Part shown: positions 1,127 through 24,264 of the stretch, piece after piece
Position numbering within the stretch: the first letter of the stretch is position 1
Layout of the letters: each line of letters begins with the position of its first letter
Virus record (IMG/VR): IMGVR_UViG_3300032242_002454
Span: 140,626 to 204,625 of that record
Length of the DNA stretch: 64,000 bases
Strand: one strand, 5' to 3'
The notes under the pieces: model-generated
Databases searched by the model: none
What the model saw: the letters and a program-made list of their open reading frames with translations, nothing else
What the model was told of the DNA's origin: nothing
Translations under genes and position numbers: made by a program

Positions 1127-1199
1127 GGGGCGTTCGTCTAATGGTCTAAGACGCTAGTCTTATTAACTAGCTAAGGGAGTTCGATTCTCTCACGCCCTA
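1127..1199 (+). tRNA. tRNA-Ile(UAU), atypical U37
   Basis: Acceptor GGGGCGT/ACGCCCT, D stem GTCT/AGAC, anticodon stem CTAGT/ACTAG with loop CTTATTA, T arm GGGAG-TTCGATT-CTCTC, A73; no encoded CCA. Confidence 0.8.
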
Positions 1200-1239
1200 C
1201 TTTTGCTTTAAGTATTCGATTCTTGATTGAAAGCAAGTA

Positions 1240-2352: not shown

Positions 2353-2915
2353 TAAATCCTAATGACGTAATTTTACATACTATAGATGCAAAATTTACAC
2401 AACTTATAATCTCTAATGCTAAAAAAGCAGAGATTGGAGGAAAATCTCAAATTAGAAATTCTAGTAAAAGATTATCTAATTTAGCAGAAGATCAGTTGGT
2501 CGGTCAAATATCTACATATTGTGGATCAATGATACTAACTGGTTCTCCAGAAGGATATATTCAAGCAAGAGATAAAGCAAATGCTACTCCTTTGGCTGGA
2601 GATAATGGACTAGATATAGTTGGTCTACCTAATGTGGATATTAAAGGTAGTTTGATGAGGTATTCTAATAATCCCCTAAATTACAGACTATTAGTTAGAC
2701 CAAAAGAAAGACACGAAAACTGGATTTATGTATTAGCATTAGTTCCAAAAGAAAGACCGTATAAAACTTATCTTGTGGGATGGGCTAATGACAATGATCT
2801 TCCATCAGAACCATATAATGGAGAGATAATATCTTTACATGGTGCATATGTTATTGAGGCTAGAAACTTAAGAAAAATTGAAGAATTAATTTCTCTTCAA
2901 CATAATTATGTCTAG
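2349..2915 (+). CDS. hypothetical protein, possible PD-(D/E)xK fold
   Basis: DNGLD....VDIK motif; YLVGW. Confidence 0.55.
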   Translation: MINPNDVILHTIDAKFTQLIISNAKKAEIGGKSQIRNSSKRLSNLAEDQLVGQISTYCGSMILTGSPEGYIQARDKANATPLAGDNGLDIVGLPNVDIKGSLMRYSNNPLNYRLLVRPKERHENWIYVLALVPKERPYKTYLVGWANDNDLPSEPYNGEIISLHGAYVIEARNLRKIEELISLQHNYV

Positions 2916-3333
2916 AAAAATTTGCATTTACTGTGGTAAAAGGAAAAATGCCAAGTCTTTTGCTAGACATATTGGACATAAAGATAATCTGGACAGTAGA
3001 TGCAGAAAGTGCGTTAAACAACATACTAAGATTAGAAATAAACTAAGGAAAAAGGCTCCTCAAAAGCCAGATGGTTGTGAGTGTTGTTTTTGTAGTCCAG
3101 ATAAATGGCACCTAGATCATGACCATGTTTATCATACCTTTAGGGGATGGTTATGTGAAACTTGTAATATAGGGATAGGAAAATTAGGAGATAATTTAGA
3201 AGGTATTGTTGCTGCTTTGAAATATTTATCAGTAAGAAGTAAGGTTGAAGATCAAGCTGTGCTAAATCACATTATTCAAGGCGTGGTTTTTTCTTTAAAC
3301 CATTTGCTAGAGAAAAGACGAAATGATGCTTGA
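2908..3333 (+). CDS. recombination endonuclease VII-like nuclease
   Basis: CECC...HLDHDH...RGWLCETCNIGIG. Confidence 0.85.
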   Translation: MSRKICIYCGKRKNAKSFARHIGHKDNLDSRCRKCVKQHTKIRNKLRKKAPQKPDGCECCFCSPDKWHLDHDHVYHTFRGWLCETCNIGIGKLGDNLEGIVAALKYLSVRSKVEDQAVLNHIIQGVVFSLNHLLEKRRNDA

Positions 3334-3358
3334 CAACAGCATTACCGTATGCTATACT
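3330..3358 (+). promoter_or_regulatory. sigma70-type promoter
   Basis: TTGACA-N17-TATACT. Confidence 0.85.
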
Positions 3359-3383
3359 TGGGAAAACACAGGAGAAATTGGAA

Positions 3384-4682
3384 ATGTCATTTGAGCATCT
3401 TAATGGTTTTGTTCGTGATCTGAAAGCAACTAGTAGTACACTTGATAAAGTTGGAATTATTGAGGATTATACCTCTTCCAATCAGGCTGGAGCAGATTTT
3501 ATCAAAAAGATTTTGCTCTATACTTATCATCCTCTTTGGCAGTATAATGTGACCAGCGATAATCTCAAAAAGAAATCTTCACTCAGAGGACAATCTTTTA
3601 AGACTGTTTTTGATTTGCTAGATTCTTTGAAGAACAGAGAAATCACAGGTCACGATGCTATTGGAGCAGTTAATACTTTTATTGACAATAATGGATACGA
3701 AGAACTCATCCACTGTATTATTGATAAGGATTTGAAAACCCGTGCTGGAGATAAGTTAATCAATAAGGCTATTCCAGATCACATTCCAACATTTAGCGTT
3801 GCATTAGCGGACAAGTATGTTCCTAAAATTGTAGACTGGAAGGATGGATGGTATGTTAGCAGGAAGATCGACGGTGCTAGATGTATTGCTATTGTTGACA
3901 GTAATGGTAATACTACCTTTTATTCCCGCACGGGAAAAAACTTTGATACTCTTGACGTTGTTAGCGGTGGGATTAAAGCTTTGGGACTTACTAATGTAAT
4001 TCTTGATGGAGAACTTTGTCTTGTTGATGAAGATGGTAATGAGGATTTTCAAGGAGTAATGAAAGAACTTCGCAAGAAGGATCATACTATTCCTAATCCT
4101 TCATATAAGATTTTTGATATGATTACTCATGATGAATTTTATAGTCAGAAGGGAGAACATAATAGACCCTTTGGTATCAGACTCAAGAATCTTACAGAAG
4201 TTATGAAAAAGAATGAATGTCCATGCCTAACACTATTGGATCAGTCCTTGATTAAGGACGAAAACCATTTTCAAGAATTTGTCAAAGAATCTACTCAGAA
4301 TGGTTGGGAGGGACTTATGCTTCGTGCAGATACTCCTTATAAGGGTAAGCGATCAAAAGACCTTCTCAAATATAAATCATTCTTTGATGACGAATATGAA
4401 GTTCTAGATACTGAAATGGGGCCGTTCCGCTATGTTAAAGATGGTGCAGAGTGCGAGGAGATTATGTTGAGTTGTGTTATGATTCAACATAAGGGTCATA
4501 CTGTCAGGGTTGGTTCTGGTTTTAGTATTGATCAAAGACAAGAGTTTTATAAGAATCCTAAGAAGATTTTGGGCAAAATAATTACTGTCCAATACTTTGA
4601 AGAAACAGAAAATGAAAAGGGTGGTATTAGCCTAAGATTTCCGACATTTAAAATTTTGCATGGGGATGAGAGGGATATTTGA
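3384..4682 (+). CDS. ATP-dependent DNA ligase
   Basis: KIDGAR adenylation motif, LDGEL, EGLMLR, LLKYK, VGSG, SLRFP; start after GGAG. Confidence 0.95.
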   Translation: MSFEHLNGFVRDLKATSSTLDKVGIIEDYTSSNQAGADFIKKILLYTYHPLWQYNVTSDNLKKKSSLRGQSFKTVFDLLDSLKNREITGHDAIGAVNTFIDNNGYEELIHCIIDKDLKTRAGDKLINKAIPDHIPTFSVALADKYVPKIVDWKDGWYVSRKIDGARCIAIVDSNGNTTFYSRTGKNFDTLDVVSGGIKALGLTNVILDGELCLVDEDGNEDFQGVMKELRKKDHTIPNPSYKIFDMITHDEFYSQKGEHNRPFGIRLKNLTEVMKKNECPCLTLLDQSLIKDENHFQEFVKESTQNGWEGLMLRADTPYKGKRSKDLLKYKSFFDDEYEVLDTEMGPFRYVKDGAECEEIMLSCVMIQHKGHTVRVGSGFSIDQRQEFYKNPKKILGKIITVQYFEETENEKGGISLRFPTFKILHGDERDI

Positions 4683-4739
4683 TTATTGGTTCCAATTAAG
4701 AGCGGTGTATAAAAATGTCCCGCCTCAAAGGAGCCTACC

Positions 4740-5165
4740 ATGCACAAGATTGTTATACGGTCAATTTTTTATCACTGGCTATTTTTATTTGTCGGTGTTG
4801 CTATAGGATTTATCTGCAACTCAGAATATGTTGGAGAAAAAGCTGTTGTTATAGAAAGATCAATTAATAATATCTTTTTCCCTATAGAATATAATGAGCA
4901 GATAGAAAATTATGTTAAATGGATGGGTAAAAATAGGATACATTCTGAATTAGGATATCCGCATGATTTTCAAATTCTTGAAGATGTTGTAAAGGGCGAG
5001 GAATATTATTGGGCTATAGCGAAATATACAGATGTAAAAACTGGACAAGAAATTAAAACTATAGTTAGTACAAAAATAAGATGGCGACCTTGGGAATATA
5101 ATTATCATACCAAGAAATTTGATAGCATCGTGGAAGAAAAAAGGCTAAGTCAGGATAAAAACTAA
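4740..5165 (+). CDS. membrane-anchored hypothetical protein
   Basis: N-terminal TM; GGAG RBS; GGTGTA at 4704. Confidence 0.7.
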   Translation: MHKIVIRSIFYHWLFLFVGVAIGFICNSEYVGEKAVVIERSINNIFFPIEYNEQIENYVKWMGKNRIHSELGYPHDFQILEDVVKGEEYYWAIAKYTDVKTGQEIKTIVSTKIRWRPWEYNYHTKKFDSIVEEKRLSQDKN

Positions 5166-5176
5166 AGAGCAGTGGC

Positions 5177-5205
5177 TTGACAAGACGATAGGACTAGTGT
5201 ACAAT
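5177..5205 (+). promoter_or_regulatory. sigma70-type promoter
   Basis: TTGACA-N17-TACAAT, CGAT in spacer. Confidence 0.85.
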
Positions 5206-5241
5206 CACAGCATACACTTTGGAAACAAACTTGGAGTTGAA

Positions 5242-5952
5242 ATGTCTGACCTAATCCAGCAAGATCGAATTGAAAAAAAGCCTGTTGTTATGAGTACCAG
5301 CAAGGCCGATGAATTTTTTAAGAATTTTCCCAAGGACAAGGTTGTTGCTTATAAAGATTATTGGGAAACTGTTCGTCCCAAGACTGATGAAGATATTTTT
5401 CGTCGCTATCTTTTTGCTTATTGCTCAGTTCACACCACTTGGCAAGGTAATGTCAAAGGATATAATGCTATTAAGAATTTTAGCGAATGGGTAGATAGCA
5501 AAGAAATTCTTTTGGAAAAACTTCATAAGAGTGGCGTCGGTCTACACAATAATCGCACCACTTATATCTGGGATTTTAGTACCAAGTTTTGGGCTAATCC
5601 TAAAGACTTTTATTTGACTACCAAGAAGTATCATGTTAAGAAACGAGACAGTATCCTTAATAAGATTAGTGGGATTGGTCTGGCTAAAATTAGCTTTGCT
5701 CTTGAAATGATCCATCCTAATGAGGCAAGAGTATTGTGCGGAGATATTCACCAATTGAGACTTTACGATGTCGAGGCTCTTAAGTATAATAAAAGTAAGT
5801 CTGGCTCAGAGATTTATAAAAAGATGGAGCGTCACTGGATGGTGAATTGTGGAAAGCTTAAAGTTCCATCGTATGTTGCCCGATCAATCTATTGGGATGA
5901 TCTGCAAAAGAAAGAAGATAGTCGTTACTGGAGTTATGTTCTGGAGAACTAA
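5242..5952 (+). CDS. HhH-family N-glycosylase/AP lyase (Ogg2-like)
   Basis: HhH ISGIGLAKISFAL and downstream DIHQLR. Confidence 0.7.
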   Translation: MSDLIQQDRIEKKPVVMSTSKADEFFKNFPKDKVVAYKDYWETVRPKTDEDIFRRYLFAYCSVHTTWQGNVKGYNAIKNFSEWVDSKEILLEKLHKSGVGLHNNRTTYIWDFSTKFWANPKDFYLTTKKYHVKKRDSILNKISGIGLAKISFALEMIHPNEARVLCGDIHQLRLYDVEALKYNKSKSGSEIYKKMERHWMVNCGKLKVPSYVARSIYWDDLQKKEDSRYWSYVLEN

Positions 5953-8197: not shown

Positions 8198-8270
8198 GGC
8201 CCAGTAACCCAATGGCAGAGGTAGCGGACTTAAAATCCGTCAAGTATCAGTTCGAGTCTGATCTGGGCCA
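8198..8270 (+). tRNA. tRNA-Leu(UAA), short variable loop
   Basis: GGCCCAG/CTGGGCC-A; anticodon arm GCGGA-CTTAAAA-TCCGT; T arm ATCAG-TTCGAGT-CTGAT. Confidence 0.92.
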
Positions 8271-8304
8271 CTTTAATGTGGTGTAAAAAGTAGACAAAAT
8301 ATAT

Positions 8305-13263: not shown

Positions 13264-15954
13264 ATGAAGTTGGCAGATAGGACGATTGAGACTCACAGCG
13301 TTGGTGTTGCAAGTAGGAACCAATTCAATATCGCTCAGACGAGCAAGATGTTTAAAATCCTTTCAGACTCTCTTTATTCTGATAAGGTAATGGCAGCAAT
13401 TCGTGAGCTTTCTACTAATGCTTATGATAGTCATATCTCTGCTGGGAATAGGAATCCTTTTAAGGTTACTCTGCCCACCGCTGCTAATCCTACCTTTATG
13501 GTGAGAGATTATGGTACTGGTCTTAGTCAGGCCGATATGGAGGACTTGTATACAACTTATGGTGCCTCAAACAAAAATGATAGCAATGATTTTGTTGGTT
13601 GTCTTGGTCTAGGGTCTAAGAGTCCGTTTGCCTACACCAAGAGCTTCACCACTGCATCATATTACAATGGTAAGAAATATACCTATATTGCAGCAATTGA
13701 TGAGAGTGGTGTTCCTACTCTGAATCTTTTTAATACTGCCGAAACATCTGAGCCTAATGGTCTTGAGATTAGTTTTGCTGTTAAGCAGCATGACTTTCAA
13801 GAGTTCACCGATAAGGCTAAGAGAATTTTCCACTACTTCCGAATGAAACCCATCATTGAGGGTGGTGTTGGTGGTAATCTTATGGATCATAAGTATAGCA
13901 ATACCAATATCGTTATTAGTGGTGAGGGTTGGAGAGTTTGCCGACTCAATAATGATAACAGTTATTTTCCCAGCAATTATCATCGAATTGATAGTGGTAT
14001 CATCGCTATCATGGGAAATATTGCGTATCCTGTTCAAACCGCACAGATTGTTGGTCAAGAAAAGGAAGAAATGCCCGACCATATTCAGAAGTGGAATAGG
14101 GCTTTCCAGAAAGCAGATATTGATTCTTGGAAGAGTTTTGTGGGAGAGATTCTTAACTCTGGTCTTTATCTTGAACTGGATTTTGGTATCGGTGAACTTG
14201 AGATGGACGTTAGCCGCGAAGGTTTGCAGTATACCAAGGATGTAATTAAGGCTCTTCGTAAAAAGACCCAAGAAATTTACATGGAGATGAAGGAAGAATT
14301 CTCCAAGAAAATTCAAGCATCCAAGACCAAGGTAGAAGCAATTACTTCATATTATACTATGAATGAATTGGCTGGCGGCTGGGGTGTTGGTGCCACTTGG
14401 ACTGATCCCAAGGGTAAAGATCATCCGATCAATTCTGGAAATGATTTGGAATATAAAATTCCGGCTGGCAAGAGTCTGTATGTTTTTAACTATAAGACTG
14501 CTGGCTATCGTTCTCGTCGTCAAGTTGCTTTGACAGATAAGATTCATCACGAAACTCTTACTGGTAAAGGTTCTTACTATTGGAATAACCAGAGGAAGAA
14601 AGGCACGATGGCTTTCTTTATCTGTGACGTTAAGGGTGAAGAAACAGCAAAGAAGATCATCACAAAGTATTGCAATAGTAATGATTGTTTTGCCTACTTG
14701 ATGCTTGATACTAAGGACTATACCAAGAGTGGAGAAGGTTTTGATAAGCTGATCGAAGATGTTGGATCTGAAAATCTGCTCAAGGTTTCAGACTACAAAC
14801 ATCTTACTCAAAGTTCTGGCCCAAGAAAGTCTTACAATAGAAATTCTAATGGTAGTGTTAGTGATCAAGACGTATTCTTTATTCATGGCTATGATGATGA
14901 TAGTAAGCAGATTACTAATCCTTATAACGATGCTACTTGTCTAAGAATTCTTTCAGAAGAACAACTGGAAGATTTTCTAGAGCAGGATGAGATAGTGTAC
15001 GTTCCTATGCTTCGATATAAGACTGAGGCTGAATCCGGTCATCCTGAGATTAGTGATATTACCACTACTCTTGGTGATGATAGCTTGAAGTTTATAGTCA
15101 AGGATTTGCTGGGAGATAGTAAGATTTATGCTATCAAAAACGCTTTTGTTAAAAAGCTTCAAAATGATGGGTATAATCTTGTCAGTTTTAATGAATTCTT
15201 TAAGCGTCAGTTGAAGATTGTTGCTCAGAAACATTTTTCAAGTTTGGCTTCTTTCAATGATCTTGTTGAGTTCTGTAAGAAAGAATATGCAAGCGAAGAA
15301 CATAAGAACAACCAATATAGATATTATAATCATGGAACTATGGATAAACAGTTCATGTTTCATATGTTGAATATCTTTGGGTTGAATTATGAAAAGTTTA
15401 TTGGTAGTAAGACTCTGGTTGAGTGCATAGACACTACTATGCTTATGGAATTCTTTGCTAATACTGTTCATGATAATAACTTTAGGATTGAAAGATTTTC
15501 TCAATCAGATTATTTCTCTCATATCTCAAGGTTAATGGACAAGGTTAATATCCGATCAGTAGACAGTAAAGATATTCGTAAGGCTAGTTTGGCTTACAAT
15601 GTCTTGACTAGTCTGATTAGTGGATCACTTTATACTGGATCTAATTCTCATAAAGCTGAAACTTATCTGAAAATTATTAAGGGTGAGTCTAAGGAAAACT
15701 TTAAACTACCAGCAATCTCTAAGATTAGAGAGAGTGTCAGAACTGAACTTGATAAGAACCCTATGCTAAAGTATATTCTTGGTAGTCATCAAGTTACTGG
15801 AACTCTTACTGATCTAAGAGCTAAGAAGAATCCTATTAATCAGCTTGATGAACGTCATTCCTATTATAATAATGATGGTAAGGATTGGATCATGCAGATG
15901 AGCCAAGAGAATATTGACCTATTTAGAATTCAGTTGAGTAGTTTAGTCAAGTAG
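13264..15954 (+). CDS. rIIA: rIIA-like protein (N-terminal GHKL ATPase)
   Basis: LYSDK..AIRELSTNAYDSH, VRDYGTG, GLGSKSPFAY, SREGL; followed by rIIB. Confidence 0.92.
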   Translation: MKLADRTIETHSVGVASRNQFNIAQTSKMFKILSDSLYSDKVMAAIRELSTNAYDSHISAGNRNPFKVTLPTAANPTFMVRDYGTGLSQADMEDLYTTYGASNKNDSNDFVGCLGLGSKSPFAYTKSFTTASYYNGKKYTYIAAIDESGVPTLNLFNTAETSEPNGLEISFAVKQHDFQEFTDKAKRIFHYFRMKPIIEGGVGGNLMDHKYSNTNIVISGEGWRVCRLNNDNSYFPSNYHRIDSGIIAIMGNIAYPVQTAQIVGQEKEEMPDHIQKWNRAFQKADIDSWKSFVGEILNSGLYLELDFGIGELEMDVSREGLQYTKDVIKALRKKTQEIYMEMKEEFSKKIQASKTKVEAITSYYTMNELAGGWGVGATWTDPKGKDHPINSGNDLEYKIPAGKSLYVFNYKTAGYRSRRQVALTDKIHHETLTGKGSYYWNNQRKKGTMAFFICDVKGEETAKKIITKYCNSNDCFAYLMLDTKDYTKSGEGFDKLIEDVGSENLLKVSDYKHLTQSSGPRKSYNRNSNGSVSDQDVFFIHGYDDDSKQITNPYNDATCLRILSEEQLEDFLEQDEIVYVPMLRYKTEAESGHPEISDITTTLGDDSLKFIVKDLLGDSKIYAIKNAFVKKLQNDGYNLVSFNEFFKRQLKIVAQKHFSSLASFNDLVEFCKKEYASEEHKNNQYRYYNHGTMDKQFMFHMLNIFGLNYEKFIGSKTLVECIDTTMLMEFFANTVHDNNFRIERFSQSDYFSHISRLMDKVNIRSVDSKDIRKASLAYNVLTSLISGSLYTGSNSHKAETYLKIIKGESKENFKLPAISKIRESVRTELDKNPMLKYILGSHQVTGTLTDLRAKKNPINQLDERHSYYNNDGKDWIMQMSQENIDLFRIQLSSLVK

Positions 15955-16047: not shown

Positions 16048-16941
16048 ATGGCTGTTCCGTTTATGTTTGTGGATGGTAATTTGACGCTGGTTCTTAATAA
16101 TCAGAGTTATCAGGTGTTGCCAGATCATATCAACTATAAGTTGATTCTGGAAAGACTTCCATCTGCTACGGCAGATGAACTACTGGAAGTTGTTGATGTT
16201 CAAAAGGCTGTTGCTACTTTTAGCGATGGTCTTGTGGAGATCAAGAATGGACAGGTTCTCTACGAGGGTGAGGAAGTTCATGGTAGTATCAGTAAGCGTA
16301 TTCTGGAGTTTATGAGTAAGGGATTGCCTTTTCAACCCCTTGTTAATTTCCTGAATAATCTCATGGAAAATCCAAGTATGCAGAGTCAAAAGGAGTTGTA
16401 TGACTTCTTGGAACATGAACATCTTCCCATTACTGAGGATGGTTTCTTCCTCGCTTATAAGGCTGTTCGTTCAGACTTTAAGGATAAGTATAGGGGAGTT
16501 TTTGACAATAGAGTTGGTAAGGTCTGTGAAATGCAAAGAGCAAAGGTTGATGATGATCGTGGTCGTGGTTGCTCTAATGGACTTCATGCTGGTGCATTGA
16601 ATTATGTTGCCAACTATGGAAGTCTTGAGTCTGGAGACAAGATTGTTATTGTCAAGATTAATCCCAAGGATGTTGTGAGCGTTCCTAGTGACTGCAATTA
16701 TGAAAAGCTTCGCACTTGTCGCTATGAAGTAGTTGGACAGTATGAGGGTGAATTGCTCAAGCCTCTCTACAAGGCCGATTTTAGTCAGGATGATTACGAG
16801 GACGATGAGGATGATTATCTGAATGACTATGATGAGAGCTATTGGGATCAGTTTGATGATGAAGATGAAGATGAGGACGATGATCTTGTTGGTGATGAAG
16901 ATGATTCAGATTTTGATAATGGACTCTACGGAACTCATTGA
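16048..16941 (+). CDS. rIIB: rIIB-like protein with acidic tail
   Basis: LYDFL..LPITEDG.FLAYKAV, CSNGLH, VKINPKDVVSVP, RTCRYEV. Confidence 0.92.
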   Translation: MAVPFMFVDGNLTLVLNNQSYQVLPDHINYKLILERLPSATADELLEVVDVQKAVATFSDGLVEIKNGQVLYEGEEVHGSISKRILEFMSKGLPFQPLVNFLNNLMENPSMQSQKELYDFLEHEHLPITEDGFFLAYKAVRSDFKDKYRGVFDNRVGKVCEMQRAKVDDDRGRGCSNGLHAGALNYVANYGSLESGDKIVIVKINPKDVVSVPSDCNYEKLRTCRYEVVGQYEGELLKPLYKADFSQDDYEDDEDDYLNDYDESYWDQFDDEDEDEDDDLVGDEDDSDFDNGLYGTH

Positions 16942-17036: not shown

Positions 17037-17114
17037 TTAGATATTGCTCTTGATAATGATGTTCATTATCCCAATATCAAAAATGTAGGTAGGAAGTTGG
17101 AAAAAGGAAAACAA

Positions 17115-18275
17115 ATGTTTAGTGATACTTTGGCTTTTAATCCATTCGATAAGACTCATAGTGCTATTGGAACAAGAGATCAAATTACTTTGAGGAATAA
17201 GTTTTTTGATTCTTTTGGTGGTCAGCAGATTTTCTGTTACAACGGTGATCCTCGTAAGAAGATCAGTAGTATGAATCATACGGATCATCTTACCACTGTT
17301 GCTATTGCTAATGATAGTCAAGGTGCTGATGCTTACTTCTATGTTAATGGTGGACGTAAACAATATGCTATTAGTAGAATTCGTGCTTGTTTTGTTGATA
17401 TGGATGCTGGGCGAGATGATCAGGGTAGCTATTTAAAGCCTAGCATTGTTATGCAAAAGAAGCGGGAGTTCTTAAATAAGATCAATAACTTTCCAGTAAA
17501 ACCAAGCTGGGTTGTTGATACTCGTAATGGCTATCAGTGCTATTGGATTCTAAACCAAAACAATATAAATCCTCACAAGACTTATTGGAATGGTATTCAA
17601 AAGAAACTTGTGAACCATTTTGGTGGTGATGCCAGAGCTATCAAAATCAATCAGATTTATAGAATCCCTTATACTTGGTGGAGGAAGGGTTGGGAAGGAA
17701 AGCAACCTTATTTTACCAGTATTTTGTCGGGATCGACTGGTGACTGGGTAAATATTGAACAACTTAAAGAAGCTCTTGATGGCGTTTCTGCTGTGGTCAA
17801 TGTTATTGCAAATAAGACTAGTGATGAATGGTTTAAGGAATATGCTAAGGCTTATAAGAGGTCTGATGTTACTGGAGTTCCAGTATCAGTCAATGTTGCT
17901 GCAACTATTGCTGATCAGATGAAGTCTCTTAACCTTAAGAACAGCACTGTATTCTGTAATACATATACCAATAGTACAGATGATATCAAGAATAAGTATG
18001 TATATTCTGGTCATGGTGTTTTCAATAAGGCTTATGGTGATCCTACTCCAGTATCTCCTGTGGTTGAGGACGATACAGATTCTCTTGAGACGCTTCCTGC
18101 TGACGCTGGGGGCGAGGATTTAGATCTTGACGGTTCCCAGACCAAGCTTTTAAAGACGGTTGTGGAGTTCCTTAATCAAGTCTCAACGCCGCTCTACTTT
18201 AGCAACAATAGATTCTTGTCTAACTCTGCTAAAGACCTTGCTTCTCAAATTAGTGACAAGTTTTGTATAGGGTGA
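17115..18275 (+). CDS. RepB'-type (AEP superfamily) primase-domain protein
   Basis: FVDMD, PSWVVDTRNGYQCYW, IYRIP. Confidence 0.75.
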   Translation: MFSDTLAFNPFDKTHSAIGTRDQITLRNKFFDSFGGQQIFCYNGDPRKKISSMNHTDHLTTVAIANDSQGADAYFYVNGGRKQYAISRIRACFVDMDAGRDDQGSYLKPSIVMQKKREFLNKINNFPVKPSWVVDTRNGYQCYWILNQNNINPHKTYWNGIQKKLVNHFGGDARAIKINQIYRIPYTWWRKGWEGKQPYFTSILSGSTGDWVNIEQLKEALDGVSAVVNVIANKTSDEWFKEYAKAYKRSDVTGVPVSVNVAATIADQMKSLNLKNSTVFCNTYTNSTDDIKNKYVYSGHGVFNKAYGDPTPVSPVVEDDTDSLETLPADAGGEDLDLDGSQTKLLKTVVEFLNQVSTPLYFSNNRFLSNSAKDLASQISDKFCIG

Positions 18276-18282
18276 GGGTTTT

Positions 18283-18696
18283 ATGGGACAACAAGATGAA
18301 GATTACAACTACGATGATGACTATGAAGATAGTCAGGATAATTTAGACAGTCAGCATAAAAATTATTTCAAGTTTGATCCTAGTGCATGGGATGCTTGGG
18401 GTAAAATGCTATACGAAGCTCTAAATGACATAGTTGAATATCCTTCTAATGTTTGGTATATTGGACATGGATTCGATAAAGGTTCGTTACCTGTGAATGA
18501 TTACTTCTCCAAATCAGGGAACTTTAAAAACTCCCTGTTTTTGGGGAACAATCATTATAAAGAACCAGTCTATAAAACCAAATACTTTATACATAACAAG
18601 TTAGATGTGGCGTATAGAAATCACTTAGTATCACACGCGGTTCATTTTCTTTCGCAACCAAACTATTATATGGGTATGTTCGACATACTTAATTAG
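18283..18696 (+). CDS. hypothetical protein
   Basis: GAGG RBS. Confidence 0.7.
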   Translation: MGQQDEDYNYDDDYEDSQDNLDSQHKNYFKFDPSAWDAWGKMLYEALNDIVEYPSNVWYIGHGFDKGSLPVNDYFSKSGNFKNSLFLGNNHYKEPVYKTKYFIHNKLDVAYRNHLVSHAVHFLSQPNYYMGMFDILN

Positions 18697-18957: not shown

Positions 18958-19193
18958 TGAACACATATTTTGAAATTTATTTTAATGAATCATCAGTCAG
19001 CAAAGTGTGCGACGCAATGGCTGAAGTTATAATCTTTATTGAAAATTGCACCAATCAAGATAGACGCATACCTGTCAAGATAGTAGAAAAAGATAAGAAA
19101 ACAGATAGGATCGTAGTGGTGTACAAACCCGTCCTGTCTGCTAAACTGGAATGGGTCAGCATCCCAAAGTACGAAGGGGAAACAATAGTATAA
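18957..19193 (+). CDS. hypothetical protein
   Basis: TAATG-coupled. Confidence 0.6.
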   Translation: MNTYFEIYFNESSVSKVCDAMAEVIIFIENCTNQDRRIPVKIVEKDKKTDRIVVVYKPVLSAKLEWVSIPKYEGETIV

Positions 19194-19627
19194 TGAAGAA
19201 CGAAAAATGGTTTTTTATAAGTAACTTTGAAGAATTTGTTGACCACTCAAGAGCTTTAGTTTTTAATTTATTTGGACAAGTTAATGAGATAGCCGCAGAT
19301 TCTTTAACTGCTTCTTTATCAACAATGAGTAAAGAAGAAATAGAAGAAATGGATACTACTCTTAGTCATGAAGAAGCGTCAGTTATAGTAAAGAATCATG
19401 CTAGAAAACAAATCAATAGAAATACTAAAGAAATTAGATATTCATTGACAGATAAAATTTTAGAAGAAATTATTGAAGATCTGAATGGAAGAATGGTTAG
19501 TAATATTTTGAATACCTTGGTTAACAAGGGAGTTTTGGATAGTGGATACGACAGTGAAAAAAACGATTTCATTTTTTGGGTGAAAGAAGATGCCAACAAT
19601 CAAAAAGAAACTCCTGAGACCGATTGA
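19193..19627 (+). CDS. hypothetical protein, paralog family A
   Basis: LNTLVNKGVLDSGYDSEKNDFIFW. Confidence 0.75.
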   Translation: MKNEKWFFISNFEEFVDHSRALVFNLFGQVNEIAADSLTASLSTMSKEEIEEMDTTLSHEEASVIVKNHARKQINRNTKEIRYSLTDKILEEIIEDLNGRMVSNILNTLVNKGVLDSGYDSEKNDFIFWVKEDANNQKETPETD

Positions 19628-20018
19628 TCAAGATATTCATTTCAAATATAGATGTTATGAATGTTCTTTAGATCATTGGTTATCAATTAGGGAAACTCAA
19701 ACAAAGGGTTTTAAAATAGTATGTGATTGTGGACAAATCCTAAAGGTAAAACTTATAGAAAAAATTGAGATAGTTTATCAGAAAGTTATCAAGAAAGAAA
19801 TTCCTCCTGAGCCAGATAAGCCAGAAGAATTACCAAAAAAATCAGAAACTATTCCAATAGATTTACTGTCACAATGTTGTACAATATTACTTGGTTATGG
19901 GTTTGATATTACTGAAGGTGAAGACTTAATAGTATCAACTTTTAATGAAAACCCTACTTATATTTGTGTAGATTTAATAAAACAAGCTTTGAAAAAATTT
20001 GGAGAAAAGAATGGCTAA
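19590..20018 (+). CDS. Zn-ribbon protein with RuvA C-terminal (domain III)-like domain
   Basis: CYEC...CDCG; Pro/Glu linker; ILLGYGF...DLIKQALKK; abuts ruvB. Confidence 0.65.
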   Translation: MPTIKKKLLRPIDQDIHFKYRCYECSLDHWLSIRETQTKGFKIVCDCGQILKVKLIEKIEIVYQKVIKKEIPPEPDKPEELPKKSETIPIDLLSQCCTILLGYGFDITEGEDLIVSTFNENPTYICVDLIKQALKKFGEKNG

Positions 20019-20928
20019 TGCAATCAGACCTACTCGTTTTAGTGAAATTATTGGACAATCAGAAGTTGTCACCAGACTCAACATCGTGGTTGCCGGTTGT
20101 AAAAACTCTGGTGGTGTGATGCCTCATCTTTTAATAGACGGCCCACCGGGGCTAGGAAAGACCACCATAGCGAGTGCTATAGCTACTGAGATGGGAGTGA
20201 ACCTATATACCATCAATGCGGCGACTATCCGTGGTATTAAAAATATTTTGCCATACATCATGGGTATGGAAAAAAAATCTGTTCTTTTTATTGATGAAAT
20301 TCATCGCCTGCCAAAAATTGTGGAAGAATTTCTCTATCCAGTAATGGAAGATTTTGTTCTTAATATTACTGTCAAAGATGAACAGGATAAAGAAAAGCCA
20401 GAAACCATTGAGTTGCCAATATTCACTTTAGTTGGAGCAACAACCAGCGGAGGATCTTTGAGTCAGCCATTTTATGATAGATTTCAAATCAAGGAACATT
20501 TGTCATTCTATAGTGAAAGTGATCTAGCTAAACTAGCAGGGTTAAATGCGCAAAAGCTCGGACTAATGATAAGCGATGATGATCTGGTTGAAATTGCCAA
20601 AAGAAGTAAAGGTACTCCAAGAATCTTAAATGGTAGGTTGCAATGGTATAAGAATTGTATAGCCTATTATACAGAGAAAAAAATGAGTGTGGATGAGATC
20701 TTTAATAGTCAGGGTATTGATAAGGACGGTTTGGATGTGTATGATAAGATGTATCTGAAGGTTCTTGCTAAGTCTAAGGGTGCTGGATTAGGTCTAAAGA
20801 GTATTTCTGCTTTAACTGGAATTGCTATGGATACTATTGAGAATAGCATTGAACCATATCTAGTACGAAAAGGTTTTGCCATAAGAACCCAAAAGGGACG
20901 AGTGATAGGCTCATATAAACATGAATGA
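20011..20928 (+). CDS. ruvB: Holliday junction branch migration ATPase RuvB
   Basis: RP..F..IGQ, GPPGLGKTT, FIDEIHR, LYPVMED, GATT, GTPR, EPYL, RTQKGR. Confidence 0.97.
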   Translation: MANAIRPTRFSEIIGQSEVVTRLNIVVAGCKNSGGVMPHLLIDGPPGLGKTTIASAIATEMGVNLYTINAATIRGIKNILPYIMGMEKKSVLFIDEIHRLPKIVEEFLYPVMEDFVLNITVKDEQDKEKPETIELPIFTLVGATTSGGSLSQPFYDRFQIKEHLSFYSESDLAKLAGLNAQKLGLMISDDDLVEIAKRSKGTPRILNGRLQWYKNCIAYYTEKKMSVDEIFNSQGIDKDGLDVYDKMYLKVLAKSKGAGLGLKSISALTGIAMDTIENSIEPYLVRKGFAIRTQKGRVIGSYKHE

Positions 20929-21253
20929 AATATCAGTATCAATAAACTTACCCACCATTATTTTCTTCTCAAGCACACTCCTAATCTTAGGGGTGTGTTT
21001 GTTTTTAATCGGCTATTTTGTTGGTAAGCAGTCTAGTGCTGGTGTATGTAATACTGTTGGTTATACAAAACCCACGAGCTTTTTTCAAGAACAGAAAAAG
21101 GATAAAACAGTTGTCTCTATTGATGACACTAAATATGTGGTTGATATTAAGACATCTGAAATGGAAAAAAAATATGAATCTTTGGGCGAAATAAAAGAAT
21201 CTGAAGAAGATATAATCAGTTCTATAAATAAACTTAAAAATATGAAAAGGTGA
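20921..21253 (+). CDS. single-TM membrane protein upstream of actin
   Basis: N-terminal TM, charged C-term helix. Confidence 0.7.
   Translation: MNEISVSINLPTIIFFSSTLLILGVCLFLIGYFVGKQSSAGVCNTVGYTKPTSFFQEQKKDKTVVSIDDTKYVVDIKTSEMEKKYESLGEIKESEEDIISSINKLKNMKR
20971..21006 (+). terminator. intrinsic terminator after ruvB (inside next ORF)
   Basis: AAGCACACTCCTA/TAGGGGTGTGTTT stem then GTTTTT. Confidence 0.7.
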
Positions 21254-21256
21254 AAT

Positions 21257-22258
21257 ATGGCAGCTGGATTAGACGTTGGCACAAGTTATATAGTGTTGTC
21301 AAAAGAAAACAAAAATAGTATCATCTATAAAGATTTTAGAGATGCTTTTTATGTTATCAAACCAACCACACCAGTCGCCACAAAGATGATAGAGAAAGGA
21401 TTAGCGGGGAAAGTTTTTATTAAAGATGCTGATGGATCATTTATTCTATTAGGTAAAGATGCTATTGAAAAAGCTATAGAAAGAAATGATACTGCAAAAA
21501 GACCAATGTATAAAGGCGTAGTATCTGCAAAAGAAAAAGATGCTAAGAAGATATTGGCTTTTATCTTGAAAGAAGTAGCTGGTAAGGCTAAGGAAGAAAA
21601 TGAAAAACTAGTATTCTGCGTTCCTGCTCAACCAGTAGATCAAGAAGATGAAGATTTCGATGTTGGATACCATGAAGATGTGGTAAAGACTATTCTAGCT
21701 GAATGTGGATATAGTGCCAAAGCTATTAATGAAGCAGAGGCGCTTTGTTATGCCGAACTGGAAGTTGAAGATTATACTGGTATCGCAGTTAGCTGTGGTG
21801 CTGGAATGACCAATGTTTGCGTGATGTTAAATGGTGAACCCACTGTAGTATTCAGTACAACTAAAAGCGGAGACTGGATTGATCGTATGAGTGCTGTTGC
21901 TACAGGAGAACCAGACAGTGTTGTACAGGCAGAGAAGGAGGCTGGTGGTTTTACTATAGGTGAACCAAATGATAATCCAGTTTTAGGTGCAGTGTCAGCA
22001 TATTATGAGAGACTAATAGACTATACTACAAAACAATTAGCTCATGCTTTATCAAATCATAAATCATTACCAAAATTTAAAAATCCTTTAGTTATTGTCG
22101 TAGCTGGTGGTACTTCTCAGGCTAATGGATATATCAAGGAGTTTGCTAAAAAACTAGAAGAAAATGGATTTCCATTACAAATTAAAGAAGTCAGACATGC
22201 GGCAGACCCCTTACATTCTGTCGCCAAAGGATGTTTGATTGCTGCAAAGGTATTATAA
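21257..22258 (+). CDS. actin-like ATPase (MreB/MamK/ParM superfamily)
   Basis: GLDVGTS, RPM..G, VP, INEAEA, SCGAGMTN, GD.ID, VAGGTS, A.G. Confidence 0.88.
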   Translation: MAAGLDVGTSYIVLSKENKNSIIYKDFRDAFYVIKPTTPVATKMIEKGLAGKVFIKDADGSFILLGKDAIEKAIERNDTAKRPMYKGVVSAKEKDAKKILAFILKEVAGKAKEENEKLVFCVPAQPVDQEDEDFDVGYHEDVVKTILAECGYSAKAINEAEALCYAELEVEDYTGIAVSCGAGMTNVCVMLNGEPTVVFSTTKSGDWIDRMSAVATGEPDSVVQAEKEAGGFTIGEPNDNPVLGAVSAYYERLIDYTTKQLAHALSNHKSLPKFKNPLVIVVAGGTSQANGYIKEFAKKLEENGFPLQIKEVRHAADPLHSVAKGCLIAAKVL

Positions 22259-22563
22259 TGTTTAATTTTCTGAATAAAATCAGGTTTGCAGTAAGATCTC
22301 CAAAATGGAGTACTGTAAGAAAACAACATCTAAAAGAAAATCCATTTTGTATAGCCTGTGGTAGAAATAAAAAATTAGAAGTTCACCATAAAACTCCAGT
22401 ACATATTAGTCCAGAACTTGAATTAGATCCTTCAAATCTTGTTACTTTATGTGCTGATCCGTGTCATATTTTGTTTGGTCATTTGATGAATTTTAAGAGT
22501 TATAATAAATCGGTCATAGAAGATTGTTCGGTGTATTTAAGTAAGGTAAAAAATAGACCCTAA
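22258..22563 (+). CDS. small HNH endonuclease
   Basis: CIACG..LEVHH...NLVTLC..CH...H. Confidence 0.88.
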   Translation: MFNFLNKIRFAVRSPKWSTVRKQHLKENPFCIACGRNKKLEVHHKTPVHISPELELDPSNLVTLCADPCHILFGHLMNFKSYNKSVIEDCSVYLSKVKNRP

Positions 22564-22591: not shown

Positions 22592-23332
22592 ATGAAAAGC
22601 TTAATTTTTCTTCTGGGTATCTTTTTATTTTTTTCAAATTCTCTTGCTGGGACAATTGATCCCAATGTTGAAGATTCTAAGTATGTGGAGTATGGAAACA
22701 AATTTAAACATACTGTCAGGATAATTTGTTATGACGATAATGGACAGGCGGCAGGTTCTGCTGTGATAGTTGATAATAATTGGATAATAACAGCAGCTCA
22801 TGTTGTAAAAAATATGAAAGATCATCACATTATTGTTGATGGTAAACAATATAATTTAGATTTTATTGTGTGTCATGAAAAATATAGCGATAATGTTTTT
22901 GGATATTATGATATTGCAATAGGTCATATAGCTGAACAGGTGGATATGTCTCCTTATCCAGATCTTTATGAAGAAGAGGACGAAGTAGGAAAAGTGGCAG
23001 CTATTGCTGGTGTTGGGCTTACTGGAAATTTTAATACTGGAGTGACCATTTCTGATGGTAAAAAAAGAGCTGGTTCAAACTATATTAAAAAAATAGAAAG
23101 AGGAACACTAGTATGCGATGCTTCCAGGCCCAGTCAAAAAATAACAGAACTTGAGTATCTTATTTGTAGTGGAGATAGTGGTGGAGGTCTTTTTATAGAT
23201 GGAAAACTTGCTGGAATAAATTCTTCTGTATTGGGGTATGATGGTAAGCCAGACTCAACGTATGGAGATGAAAGTTGTCATACAAGAATTAGTATGTATA
23301 TTCCATGGATTAGAAACATTATTAAGAAATAA
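22592..23332 (+). CDS. secreted trypsin-like (S1) serine protease
   Basis: Signal peptide, TAAH, DIA, GDSGG. Confidence 0.93.
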   Translation: MKSLIFLLGIFLFFSNSLAGTIDPNVEDSKYVEYGNKFKHTVRIICYDDNGQAAGSAVIVDNNWIITAAHVVKNMKDHHIIVDGKQYNLDFIVCHEKYSDNVFGYYDIAIGHIAEQVDMSPYPDLYEEEDEVGKVAAIAGVGLTGNFNTGVTISDGKKRAGSNYIKKIERGTLVCDASRPSQKITELEYLICSGDSGGGLFIDGKLAGINSSVLGYDGKPDSTYGDESCHTRISMYIPWIRNIIKK

Positions 23333-23334
23333 TT

Positions 23335-24264
23335 ATGTTAAAAAAGAAACAATGCAAGCTTTTACCGCACACAAGAAAAGATATTTATGGTTTATCGGTA
23401 GGATCTAGTCAGTTCCATAGCTGGCCCATTGATAAATTCTCAGTTCCTCAACAATGGAGACATTCTCAAGGAGAAGGTGTAACTGTAGCAGTAATAGATA
23501 CTGGATGCGATTTAAATCACGAAGATATTAAAGACAATATTGTAGATGGTTATAATTTCATAAATCCAGATCAACCCCCACAAGATGATAATGGTCACGG
23601 AACTCACGTTGCTGGTACAATAGCTGCCGTGAACAATGGTGTAGGCATGGTAGGAGTCGCTCCACAAGCCAAGATCATGCCTATTAAAGCACTTGGAGCC
23701 GATGGGTCAGGAATTAATAAAAACGTCGCTGAAGCGATTGTGTGGGCTGCTGACCACGGAGCAGATTTGATAACTATGTCTCTAGGTTCAGAATATCCAT
23801 CCATTCAGATAGAAAAAGCTATAGAGTATGCTAAATATAAAAATGTAATTATATTTTGTGCGGCAGGCAATAGTGGAATAGAGTCTGGCATCCAATATCC
23901 TGCTAAGTATAATAATACTATTAGTGTTGGAGCAATAGATGAAAAATTAAATATTTGTACATTTAGTTGTTGTGGAGAAGAGCTTGACTTTTTAGCTCCG
24001 GGAGCAGATATTATTAGTGCTGTACCTGGAAATGCTTATGCTTCTATGTCTGGAACAAGCATGGCAACACCATTTGCCGTAGGTTGTGCTGCGTTGTTTC
24101 TATCTTTTGCCAAAAAAATTAAGTTCGCTATGCTAGAGAATATGCTTAAATCATCAGACGACTATGTGTCTGTTTTTGCTAAAAAAGCCATGAAGCTACA
24201 TCAGCAAAATTATACAGGAATAAAGAAATATGAAGGCTATGGTATCATTAGACCCATACTCTAA
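23335..24264 (+). CDS. subtilisin-like (S8) protease
   Basis: IDTG, HGTHVAG, AAGN, GTSMATP. Confidence 0.96.
   Translation: MLKKKQCKLLPHTRKDIYGLSVGSSQFHSWPIDKFSVPQQWRHSQGEGVTVAVIDTGCDLNHEDIKDNIVDGYNFINPDQPPQDDNGHGTHVAGTIAAVNNGVGMVGVAPQAKIMPIKALGADGSGINKNVAEAIVWAADHGADLITMSLGSEYPSIQIEKAIEYAKYKNVIIFCAAGNSGIESGIQYPAKYNNTISVGAIDEKLNICTFSCCGEELDFLAPGADIISAVPGNAYASMSGTSMATPFAVGCAALFLSFAKKIKFAMLENMLKSSDDYVSVFAKKAMKLHQQNYTGIKKYEGYGIIRPIL

What the first reader, a model, noticed from the sequence alone, without database searches (positions are those of the whole stretch)
19590..20928. RuvB partnered with a Zn-ribbon/RuvA-domain-III hybrid instead of RuvA
Seen: the gene overlapping the ruvB start has CxxC...CxC, a Pro/Glu linker, then LLSQCCTILLGYGFDITEGEDLI...VDLIKQALKK. 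Known: RuvA domain III (AL..LGY...A......LI..AL) is the RuvB-binding module, tethered by a flexible linker to the OB/HhH junction-binding domains, which are absent here. Inference: an adaptor that loads RuvB on a different substrate or replaces RuvA. Endonuclease VII (2908) could serve as resolvase.
Basis: partly seen in the sequence, partly recalled or inferred. Interest (0 to 1): 0.65.

Follow-up and report, generated by a model that had tools for sequence, protein, structure and literature searches.

The report
Phage RuvB with RuvA-derived mini-adaptor
A freshwater jumbo phage encodes its own RuvB DNA motor, and where bacteria keep ruvA it has a tiny protein that retains only RuvA's RuvB-docking domain, tethered to a zinc ribbon: an undescribed and apparently optional adaptor for a well-known recombination motor.

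Summary
Window 19590..20018 encodes a 142-aa protein (ORF142) whose stop overlaps the start of a bona fide RuvB (20011..20928). ORF142 has three parts: a basic four-Cys zinc ribbon, a disordered linker, and a three-helix C-terminal domain. That domain is homologous to RuvA domain III, the RuvB-binding module, by unbiased PDB profile search, hhalign, Foldseek and VIA-align. RuvA residues needed to activate RuvB align with invariant ORF142 residues. The complete 204.6-kb phage genome has no RuvA_N, HhH or RuvA_C Pfam match. A controlled complex prediction with the phage RuvB gave only "weak support".

Across 88 related viral loci, ORF142 is present in 72 and has been lost repeatedly, including from three complete genomes, while RuvB persists. 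Two other orphan genes, ORF137 and ORF158, are constant neighbours of RuvB.

Best reading: ORF142 is a RuvA-derived, accessory tether and activator for the phage RuvB within a larger uncharacterised module. The family is large (556 clusters) and I found no description of it. It is a new variant of a known kind. Interest is moderate to good.

The parts
19590..20018 (+). ORF142: zinc ribbon, linker and RuvA-domain-III-like protein (142 aa). It sits in the ruvA position, directly upstream of RuvB and overlapping its start.
   Evidence: ORF; family alignments A1 and A6; AF2 model with pLDDT 75; 556 relatives in the deep search.
19620..19775 (+). ORF142 residues ~11-62: a basic four-Cys zinc ribbon with invariant P11, Y20, C22, C25, W30, V44, C45 and C47.
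   Evidence: Invariant columns. Beta-strands 17-21, 28-32, 42-44 and 50-52 at pLDDT ~90. Net charge +2 to +10, median +6. Only weak generic Zn-ribbon matches such as ZitP, eL43 and CSL.
19776..19856 (+). ORF142 residues ~63-89: a disordered K/E/S/P-rich linker.
   Evidence: pLDDT below 50 for residues 70-85. Across the family its length runs from 8 to 63 aa, median 21.
19857..20015 (+). ORF142 residues 90-142: a three-helix domain homologous to RuvA domain III.
   Evidence: PDB profile top hit 1IXS_A at E 1.7e-3, improving to 4.6e-4. hhalign 95.3%, P 2e-8, onto E. coli RuvA 158-202. Foldseek top 18 hits are all RuvA. VIA Z 7.0-8.9. The residue mapping is L100/Y103/G104/F105/E109/L134 to E. coli L167/L170/G171/Y172/E176/L199.
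20011..20928 (+). Phage RuvB (305 aa from the ATG at 20011; the ORF call begins at a TTG at 19999). It has intact Walker A and B, arginine finger and sensor 2 motifs.
   Evidence: Pfam RuvB_N, lid and RuvB_C. 125 identical positions in a 337-column alignment with E. coli RuvB. The phage clade is separated from cellular RuvB with support 100.
20359..20415 (+). RuvB presensor-1 beta-hairpin (residues 117-135), the element that RuvA domain III binds in cellular RuvB.
   Evidence: It aligns with E. coli L135-L152 at a similar length, with hydrophobic flanks and a charged tip. The role of the hairpin comes from PMC2628435 and PMC9477746.
19193..19627 (+). ORF158 (probably 144 aa from the ATG at 19193; the ORF call starts at 19151). 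A constant upstream neighbour of this RuvB clade, with an orphan fold and a possible C-terminal winged-helix-like hairpin.
   Evidence: Present in 88 of 88 loci. AF2 pLDDT 82. No structural match, Z below 5. hhalign against RuvA 0.1%.
18283..18696 (+). ORF137: a protein with an acidic N-terminus. The second constant member of the module.
   Evidence: Found in 82 of 82 loci with at least 2.5 kb upstream of RuvB. No Pfam or PHROG hit. hhalign against RuvA 0.0%.
20970..21001 (+). Terminator-like hairpin (14-bp stem plus T-run) just downstream of RuvB.
   Evidence: This is a consensus match only.
2908..3333 (+). Endonuclease VII-type junction resolvase: the candidate resolvase, 17 kb away.
   Evidence: PF02945 2.4e-10. 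No RuvC in the genome.
60748..61773 (+). RecA/UvsX-type recombinase, part of the phage's own recombination toolkit.
   Evidence: PF00154 8e-17 at G000:201388-202197.

Best explanation
ORF142 is a RuvA-derived mini-adaptor for the phage's own RuvB.

Shown: its C-terminal three-helix domain is a homologue of RuvA domain III, and it sits in the ruvA position, overlapping the RuvB start in a way consistent with translational coupling.

Inferred: this domain docks on the presensor-1 beta-hairpin and helix alpha3 surface of phage RuvB, as RuvA domain III does. There it would recruit the hexamer and stimulate it, since domain III acts as a nucleotide-exchange and ATPase-activating factor in cellular RuvAB.

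RuvA's OB and HhH junction-binding core has been replaced by a small basic zinc ribbon, joined through a flexible tether of very variable length. The ribbon would anchor RuvB to DNA or to another phage protein. The constant neighbours ORF158 and ORF137 are the obvious candidates.

Because related phages have lost ORF142 repeatedly while keeping RuvB, ORF137 and ORF158, it is an accessory enhancer or targeting subunit, not an obligatory RuvA replacement. The module probably drives branch migration or fork remodelling during recombination-dependent replication. The phage's RecA/UvsX-like recombinase would act upstream and its endonuclease VII would act as resolvase.
For: Homology of the C-terminal domain to RuvA domain III:
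- The family profile searched against all PDB sequences gives Thermus RuvA domain III (1IXS_A) as top hit, at E=1.7e-3. This improves to 4.6e-4 with a more diverse alignment, when S. thermophilus and E. coli RuvA also appear.
- hhalign of the C-domain against 8 RuvAs gives 95.3%, P=2e-8, exactly on E. coli residues 158-202. The Zn-ribbon and ORF158 negative controls give 0.1%.
- The Foldseek top 18 hits are all RuvA, at rmsd 0.9-1.4 A.
- VIA Z is 7.0-8.9 for RuvA, against 5.4 or less for UBA domains. In a Foldseek-independent scan RuvA takes ranks 1-4 of 48,161 chains.
- RuvA_C is the Pfam family most often matched by individual members, 10 of 31. Sibling clusters carry PF07499.

Interface:
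- E. coli L167 and L170, whose Ala mutants lose RuvB activation (PMC2628435), align with invariant L100 and with Y103. G171, Y172, E176 and L199 align with invariant G104, F105, E109 and L134.
- RuvB keeps the hairpin.
- Complex prediction gave 'weak support': ipSAE 0.60 against a best control of 0.03. The mark was reached by 58 of 80 solved complexes and 2 of 110 mismatched pairs. But only 7 of those 80 solved complexes, and both mismatches that passed, reached it at 0.60 or under. The runs agree in at least 97% of contacts and the partner pLDDT is at least 87. My own alignments were used, so the counts hold only roughly.

Linkage:
- The gene is adjacent to RuvB and overlaps its start in every ORF142-bearing locus, including loci found from the ORF142 side.
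- Canonical ruvA occupies the same position in cellular operons.
- The genome has no RuvA domains.

Accessory status:
- 72 of 88 loci carry it.
- Three complete genomes lack it at E<=1, and the positive control rings 4 of 4.
- The RuvB tree needs 8 changes, at least 2 of them forced by strongly supported branches, and all basal lineages carry ORF142.
Against: - The binding prediction is only a weak pass. Because RuvA domain III-RuvB complexes are solved, it may reflect memory of likeness rather than real binding.
- No member reaches Pfam's RuvA_C gathering score in my scans.
- Small three-helix domains are common, and an unrelated helical protein reaches Z 6.9.
- The RuvB hairpin shows no detectable relaxation in lineages that lost ORF142, and its long and short forms do not track ORF142 presence. 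So there is no co-evolutionary signal.
- The hairpin tip is much more charged than in cellular RuvB.
- The function of the zinc ribbon is entirely inferred.
- There are no expression data: no RNA runs hold the locus.
Confidence: 0.6

Rival explanations
1. Full functional RuvA replacement. The zinc ribbon oligomerises and itself recognises Holliday junctions or forks, making ORF142 the sole and sufficient loader of phage RuvB.
For: The gene occupies the ruvA position. There is no RuvA_N, HHH_5 or RuvA_C elsewhere in the genome. The ribbon is consistently basic, with a median charge of +6. The architecture of an anchor, a flexible linker and domain III mirrors RuvA.
Against: ORF142 was lost repeatedly while RuvB stayed conserved, including in three complete genomes that also lack any RuvA domain. 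A ~50-aa ribbon has no detectable similarity to the OB and HhH core (hhalign 0.1%). Linker length varies from 8 to 63 aa, which argues against a fixed junction-sandwich geometry. ORF137 and ORF158 are more constant partners.
Confidence: 0.15
2. Decoy or insulator. The domain-III copy competes with host RuvA. It would either block host RuvAB, as a form of host takeover, or keep phage RuvB from being captured by host RuvA. Conversely, in phages lacking ORF142, the host RuvA would be the working partner of phage RuvB.
For: A domain-III module without a junction-binding core is what a competitor would look like. Cross-species RuvA-RuvB complementation is documented (PMC9477746). The hairpin is retained even where ORF142 is absent, which implies another domain-III donor or an intrinsic role.
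Against: The gene is strictly adjacent to the phage RuvB, and I never saw it without RuvB. A conserved, basic ribbon and a tether are unnecessary for a simple decoy. The host is unknown, so compatibility cannot be assessed.
Confidence: 0.15
3. The C-terminal domain is a generic UBA-like three-helix module used for something other than RuvB binding, such as dimerisation or binding ORF158 or ORF137. Its adjacency to RuvB would reflect only membership of a shared operon.
For: RuvA_C belongs to a widespread small-helical fold class. UBA domains and other helical proteins score Z 5-6.9. The Pfam hits are sub-threshold. The complex support is weak.
Against: Sequence profiles, not just fold, pick RuvA domain III first out of 177,635 PDB sequences. 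hhalign gives 95%. The RuvB-activating residues are conserved. Only 1 of the 17 A1 members touched the UBA model, at E 0.054.
Confidence: 0.08

Closest known systems
Bacterial RuvA (Holliday-junction binding subunit of RuvAB; structures 1IXR/1IXS, 1CUK, 7PBL)
   Same: Gene position directly upstream of ruvB and coupled to it. A flexible linker is followed by a C-terminal three-helix domain III. The residues equivalent to E. coli L167, L170, G171, Y172, E176 and L199 are conserved. The partner RuvB keeps the presensor-1 hairpin.
   Different: Domains I (OB) and II (two HhH), which tetramerise and clamp the junction, are absent. They are replaced by a ~60-aa basic four-Cys zinc ribbon. The protein is 118-184 aa rather than about 200. 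It is dispensable in evolution, whereas RuvA is a fixed partner of cellular RuvB. No member passes Pfam's RuvA_C threshold in my scans.
Isolated RuvA domain III (the crystallised or cryo-EM RuvA-D3 fragment bound to RuvB)
   Same: The same fold (rmsd 1.2-1.9 A over 46-52 residues) and the same presumed docking surface. In cellular RuvAB this domain regulates the RuvB nucleotide cycle (PMC9477746).
   Different: Here it is a natural stand-alone design joined to a different anchor, not an experimental fragment. Binding and stimulation are not demonstrated.
T4-type recombination-dependent replication toolkit (UvsX recombinase, UvsW branch-migration helicase, gp49 endonuclease VII)
   Same: The phage carries rIIA/rIIB-like genes, a RecA/UvsX-type recombinase, endonuclease VII and a DNA ligase. 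A branch-migration motor would fit the same pathway logic.
   Different: The motor here is a RuvB AAA+ hexamer with its own adaptor rather than an SF2 helicase. [quoted passage not shown]
UBA domains and the TnsC C-terminal helical domain (fold neighbours)
   Same: A compact three-helix bundle of about 45-50 residues.
   Different: Lower structural scores (Z 5.8 or below) and no sequence-profile signal. They have no link to RuvB.

Membership tests
RuvA (full-length Holliday junction branch migration subunit) | Domain I, OB fold (Pfam RuvA_N, PF01330) | tested here: not met
   No match in the whole genome at E<=10, and the control rings in 10 of 14 genomes. hhalign of ORF142 residues 1-68 against the RuvA alignment gives probability 0.1%.
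RuvA (full-length Holliday junction branch migration subunit) | Domain II, two helix-hairpin-helix motifs (HHH_5, PF14520) | tested here: not met
   No genome match at E<=1, and the control rings 14 of 14. The AF2 model shows beta-strands and a disordered linker in that region, not HhH.
RuvA (full-length Holliday junction branch migration subunit) | Gene immediately upstream of ruvB and co-expressed with it | tested here: met
   There is an 8-nt overlap, ATGGCTAA, with the RuvB ATG at 20011. The same arrangement occurs in 72 related loci. Cellular ruvA-ruvB operons are shown.
RuvA (full-length Holliday junction branch migration subunit) | Tetramer that binds four-way junctions | not testable with these tools
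   This needs EMSA, SEC-MALS or a structure.
RuvA domain III / RuvA_C (PF07499) | Match to the Pfam model at its gathering score (24 bits) | tested here: not met
   The window protein has no hit at E<=10. 10 of 31 diverse members hit RuvA_C, but all below threshold, with a best E of 0.0099. One relative has a precomputed weak hit. An Atlas sibling cluster has PF07499 in 50% of members.
RuvA domain III / RuvA_C (PF07499) | Profile-level sequence homology to RuvA domain III | tested here: met
   The PDB profile search gives 1IXS_A as top hit at E 4.6e-4, covering residues 10-61 of 62. hhalign gives 95.3%, P 2e-8, onto E. coli RuvA 158-202.
RuvA domain III / RuvA_C (PF07499) | Three-helix fold superimposable on solved domain III | tested here: met
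   VIA Z 7.0-8.9, rmsd 1.2-1.9 A, 46-52 residues aligned, RuvA in ranks 1-13. RuvA takes ranks 1-4 in the Foldseek-independent scan.
RuvA domain III / RuvA_C (PF07499) | Hydrophobic residues of helix alpha7 and the C-terminal helix that are needed for RuvB activation (E. coli L167, L170, with Y172 and L199) | tested here: met
   They align with L100 (invariant in A1), Y103 (at least 90%), F105 and L134 (both invariant in A1). The mutant data come from PMC2628435.
RuvA domain III / RuvA_C (PF07499) | Physically binds the RuvB presensor-1 hairpin | tested here: inconclusive
   Complex prediction gave 'weak support': 0.60 against a best control of 0.03. 58 of 80 solved complexes and 2 of 110 mismatched pairs reach the mark. 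At 0.60 or under, only 7 of those 80 solved complexes reach it, along with both passing mismatches. The result may reflect memory of solved RuvA-D3/RuvB complexes.
RuvB (for the partner gene 20011..20928) | RuvB_N AAA+ domain, RuvB lid, C-terminal winged helix, and presensor-1 hairpin | tested here: met
   Pfam E-values 1.2e-46, 1.6e-7 and 2.3e-16. The Walker A and B, DRF arginine finger and GTPRI sensor 2 motifs and the hairpin all align with E. coli RuvB.
Zinc ribbon (generic) | Two Cys knuckles on beta-hairpins, with four invariant Cys | tested here: met
   C22, C25, C45 and C47 are invariant in 31 diverse members. There are four short strands at pLDDT ~90. The only matches are weak ones to generic ribbons. 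Metal binding itself cannot be tested here.
UBA domain (PF00627, ubiquitin-binding) | Sequence match to UBA models, or a best structural match to UBA domains | tested here: not met
   1 of 17 members hits at E 0.054. UBA structures score Z 5.4 or less, below all 13 RuvA entries.

The most novel reading that the evidence does not exclude
ORF137, ORF158, ORF142 and RuvB form a previously unknown, RuvA-independent DNA-remodelling machine of freshwater jumbo phages. In it, RuvA's domain III has been cut loose and reused as a portable 'RuvB handle' on a zinc-ribbon anchor, and the orphan proteins ORF137 and ORF158 supply substrate recognition. That would show that the RuvB motor can be re-targeted to substrates other than RuvA-bound Holliday junctions.
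Probability: 0.25. Interest if true: 0.75.

Novelty: new variant of a known kind. Interest (0 to 1): 0.55.

Why it matters
RuvAB is the textbook bacterial branch-migration machine, and RuvA's three-domain architecture is regarded as fixed.

Here a large family of environmental jumbo phages keeps the RuvB motor but has stripped RuvA down to its RuvB-docking domain and grafted it onto a different anchor. The family has 556 clusters at the 50% identity level, and I found no Pfam, PHROG or literature description of it.

If the docking is real, this is a natural minimal adaptor. It separates two roles that are combined in RuvA: recruiting and activating RuvB, and clamping the junction. That would be useful for dissecting how domain III drives the RuvB nucleotide cycle.

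It also points to two further orphan proteins as candidate substrate-recognition subunits for a viral RuvB. And it revises the view that jumbo-phage resolvases work without a RuvB-type motor.

Tried and rejected
1. **One search is invalid.** The alignment A3 I used accidentally contained two ORF158-type rows, so its hits were the ORF158 homologues. I redid the search with the clean alignment A1 and added a positive control.

2. **ORF158 as a disguised RuvA domain I/II: rejected.** hhalign gives 0.1%. There is no structural match: Foldseek probability is below 0.5, VIA Z is 4.8 at best, and the Atlas returns only viral hypothetical clusters. There are only recurrent weak winged-helix Pfam hints.

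3. **ORF137 as RuvA-like: rejected.** hhalign gives 0.0%.

4. **Hairpin relaxation or co-variation after ORF142 loss: none seen.** This is neutral.

5. **'Phage' RuvB hits in the reference phage collection.** The two annotated records I inspected that carry ruvA-ruvB are cellular DNA. A third annotated hit has ruvB, without ruvA, at the very end of a prophage record. Four unannotated records also encode a RuvA-type protein just upstream of their ruvB. These hits therefore say nothing about true phage RuvB. tblastn with ORF142 found nothing there.

6. **PHROGs for ORF142 and BFVD fold search:** nothing informative.

7. **Expression:** no RNA run holds the locus.

8. **Literature:** no description of a viral RuvB with a zinc-ribbon/domain-III partner was found.

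9. **One look-up (P0182) was not sent** because the service was busy.

Full report
**What is there.** The window is the last 64 kb of a complete 204,625-bp viral record with direct terminal repeats. It is about 33% G+C, and all its genes lie on one strand. It is a jumbo phage, and related sequence appears in freshwater and lake metagenomes.

At 19590..20018 there is a 142-aa ORF, which I call ORF142. Its TAA stop (20016-20018) overlaps the start of a 305-aa RuvB. Judging by homologues, RuvB begins at the ATG at 20011, behind a GGAG at 20001-20004. RuvB is unambiguous. It matches RuvB_N at 1.2e-46, the RuvB lid at 1.6e-7 and the RuvB winged helix at 2.3e-16. [quoted passage not shown]

**The C-terminal domain is RuvA domain III.** ORF142 has no Pfam or PHROG match. 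A profile of its family was searched against all 177,635 distinct PDB sequences. The top hit was Thermus RuvA domain III crystallised with RuvB (1IXS_A, E=1.7e-3), matched end to end. With a more diverse alignment the E-value improved to 4.6e-4, and RuvA domain III chains from S. thermophilus and E. coli appeared as well.

- **Profile-profile comparison.** hhalign of the C-terminal 55 residues against eight cellular RuvAs gives 95.3% probability (P=2e-8), landing exactly on E. coli RuvA 158-202. The zinc-ribbon half and the ORF158 family, used as negative controls, each give 0.1%.
- **Predicted structure.** The AlphaFold model shows a beta-rich ribbon (residues 17-52, pLDDT ~90), a disordered linker (residues ~60-88) and a three-helix bundle (residues 90-141, pLDDT ~83).
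- **Fold searches.** The top 18 Foldseek hits are all RuvA, at rmsd 0.9-1.4 A. VIA-align gives Z 7.0-8.9 (rmsd 1.2-1.9 A, 46-52 residues) for 13 RuvA entries. The next hits are TnsC at Z 5.8 and UBA domains at Z 5.4 or less. A Foldseek-independent scan of 48,161 chains again ranks RuvA first to fourth, although an unrelated helical protein reaches Z 6.9. The fold evidence therefore needs the sequence evidence alongside it.
- **Pfam, member by member.** RuvA_C is the commonest family hit across diverse members, 10 of 31, but always below threshold.

**Interface.** E. coli RuvA L167A and L170A abolish RuvB activation without affecting junction binding. The RuvB hairpin L135-L152 is the RuvA-binding element (PMC2628435). 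Domain III binds helix alpha3 and the presensor-1 hairpin, and it acts as a nucleotide-exchange and ATPase-activating factor (PMC9477746).

In my alignment L167, L170, G171, Y172, E176 and L199 correspond to ORF142 L100, Y103, G104, F105, E109 and L134. All are invariant or nearly so in the closer family. The phage RuvB keeps a hairpin of similar length with hydrophobic flanks, but its tip is far more charged.

- The ipSAE score was 0.60 against a best control of 0.03.
- The mark was reached by 58 of 80 solved complexes and by 2 of 110 mismatched pairs.
- At 0.60 or under, only 7 of those 80 solved complexes reached it, along with both mismatches that passed.
- The runs agree in at least 97% of contacts and the partner pLDDT is at least 87.
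- My own alignments were used, so the counts hold only roughly. A pass may reflect memory of solved RuvA-D3/RuvB complexes.

**The rest of the protein.** The N-terminal ~62 residues carry four invariant Cys plus invariant P11, Y20, W30 and V44. This part is consistently basic, with a net charge of +2 to +10 and a median of +6. The linker varies from 8 to 63 residues and is rich in K, E, S and P. Only weak, generic zinc-ribbon similarities were found, such as ZitP, eL43 and CSL-type ribbons. Its ligand, DNA or protein, is unknown.

**No RuvA elsewhere.** The complete genome has no RuvA_N, RuvA_C, HHH_5 or RuvC match, and the control genomes ring in each search. It does encode endonuclease VII at 2908..3333 (2.4e-10), an ATP-dependent ligase and a RecA/UvsX-type recombinase at 60748..61773.

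**Distribution, and the twist.** ORF142 belongs to a large, uniform family. The deep search finds 556 clusters with E<=1e-3 and 282 with E<=1e-10. All 150 listed hits are 118-184 aa and match end to end. The phage-type RuvB occurs on at least 506 viral contigs.

I took 88 loci carrying this RuvB and searched them with separate HMMs.
- The ORF142 homologue is present in 72 of the 88. Counting distinct RuvB sequences, it is present with 51 of 64.
- A homologue of the gene upstream of ORF142, ORF158, is present in all 88.
- ORF137 is present in 82 of the 82 loci with enough upstream sequence. The primase-like ORF392 is present in only 63 of 82.
- In the 16 loci without ORF142, ORF158 abuts RuvB directly.

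Three complete genomes have no ORF142 anywhere at E<=1. They are 199.9, 230.1 and 161.5 kb, and their RuvB is 84-86% identical to the window's. The positive control rings in 4 of 4 genomes, and these three genomes also have no RuvA_C or RuvA_N.

On a RuvB tree the phage clade is separated from cellular RuvB with support 100. All basal lineages carry ORF142. The presence/absence pattern needs 8 changes, at least 2 of them forced by strongly supported branches. ORF142 is therefore ancestral and has been lost repeatedly. Seeding the search from ORF142 instead still finds RuvB immediately downstream. The RuvB hairpin is equally conserved with and without ORF142.

**Interpretation.** It is shown that ORF142 is a real, conserved gene in the ruvA position, and that its C-terminal domain is homologous to RuvA domain III with the activation residues intact. 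It is inferred that this domain docks on phage RuvB, and that the ribbon tethers RuvB to DNA or to ORF158 or ORF137.

RuvB, ORF137 and ORF158 persist without ORF142, so ORF142 is best seen as an accessory tether and activator, not an obligatory RuvA replacement. In the phages without ORF142, RuvB may rely on ORF137 and ORF158, or on the host RuvA. Cross-species RuvA-RuvB function is documented.

ORF158 folds confidently (pLDDT 82) but has no structural relative. Neither it nor ORF137 resembles RuvA.

[quoted passage not shown] I found no paper describing a viral RuvB with a zinc-ribbon/domain-III partner. The apparent phage RuvBs in the reference collection that I could check are cellular ruvAB carried on misassigned records or at prophage edges. 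This is a new variant of a known kind: a domain-swapped RuvA derivative.

**Caveats.** All functional statements are computational. The binding prediction is only a weak pass. There are no expression data. The ribbon domain was not modelled on its own. One search was invalid and was repeated.

Noticed in passing
window 21257..22258 (+): A phage-encoded actin-like protein matches Pfam Volactin (PF25216, 1.1e-63), a family named after an archaeal actin, with a weaker MreB match. It is conserved downstream of RuvB in 59 of 88 related loci. A cytoskeletal protein in a freshwater jumbo phage may deserve a look of its own.
   Followed up: partly
window 19193..19627 and 18283..18696 (+): ORF158 (probably 144 aa) and the acidic-N-terminus ORF137 are constant neighbours of this viral RuvB, in 88 of 88 and 82 of 82 loci. 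Both are orphans with no Pfam, PHROG or structural relative. They may be the real substrate-recognition partners of the phage RuvB.
   Followed up: partly
window 13264..15954 and 16048..16941 (+): An 896-aa ORF is followed by a 297-aa ORF. Homologues of the 297-aa ORF in related contigs carry Pfam Phage_T4_rIIB (PF26926), which suggests an rIIA/rIIB-like pair just upstream of the RuvB module. My Pfam copy gave no hit for the window copies.
   Followed up: partly
window 17097..18275 (+): A 392-aa protein has weak RepB-primase (PF16793, E 0.023) and phrog_3123 (7.8e-9) similarity. It lies between rIIB and ORF137 in 63 of 82 loci, so it is a variable member of the neighbourhood.
   Followed up: partly
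window 22231..22563, 22592..23332, 23335..24264 (+): An HNH endonuclease, a trypsin-like serine protease with a hydrophobic N-terminus that could be a signal peptide (not tested), and a subtilisin-like protein (the S8 assignment rests on its syntenic homologues) lie in a row downstream of the actin-like gene. The same order is seen in relatives (L008).
   Followed up: no
window 20970..21001 (+): A strong terminator-like hairpin (14-bp stem, T-run) lies 42 nt after the RuvB stop, but inside the called ORF 20921..21253. Either the hairpin encodes the ORF's hydrophobic segment, or that ORF's start is miscalled.
   Followed up: no
window 1127..1200 and 8198..8271 (+): Two phage-encoded tRNAs, Ile (anticodon TAT) and Leu (anticodon TAA). 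Both read A-ending codons, consistent with the AT-rich genome.
   Followed up: no
window 2908..5952 (+): A DNA repair and recombination cluster: endonuclease VII (2908..3333), an ATP-dependent DNA ligase (3330..4682) and an Ogg-type HhH DNA glycosylase (5197..5952).
   Followed up: partly
L006 (CAKLQF020000007.1) and L007 (MN180249.1): Records filed as 'Acinetobacter phage MD-2021a' and 'Wolbachia phage WO' (UNVERIFIED) carry ordinary chromosomal neighbourhoods: purL-dgt-ruvA-ruvB-tolQ in one, and rnhB-ruvA-ruvB-purF in the other. They are cellular DNA in a phage collection and would mislead surveys of phage RuvAB.
   Followed up: yes
L067:2467-3000 and L008:2640-2996: These are the extremes of the ORF142 tether. 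One has a 63-residue, strongly acidic linker and a CDYC second knuckle. The other has an 8-residue linker in a 119-aa protein. This natural length series could be used to test the tether model.
   Followed up: no
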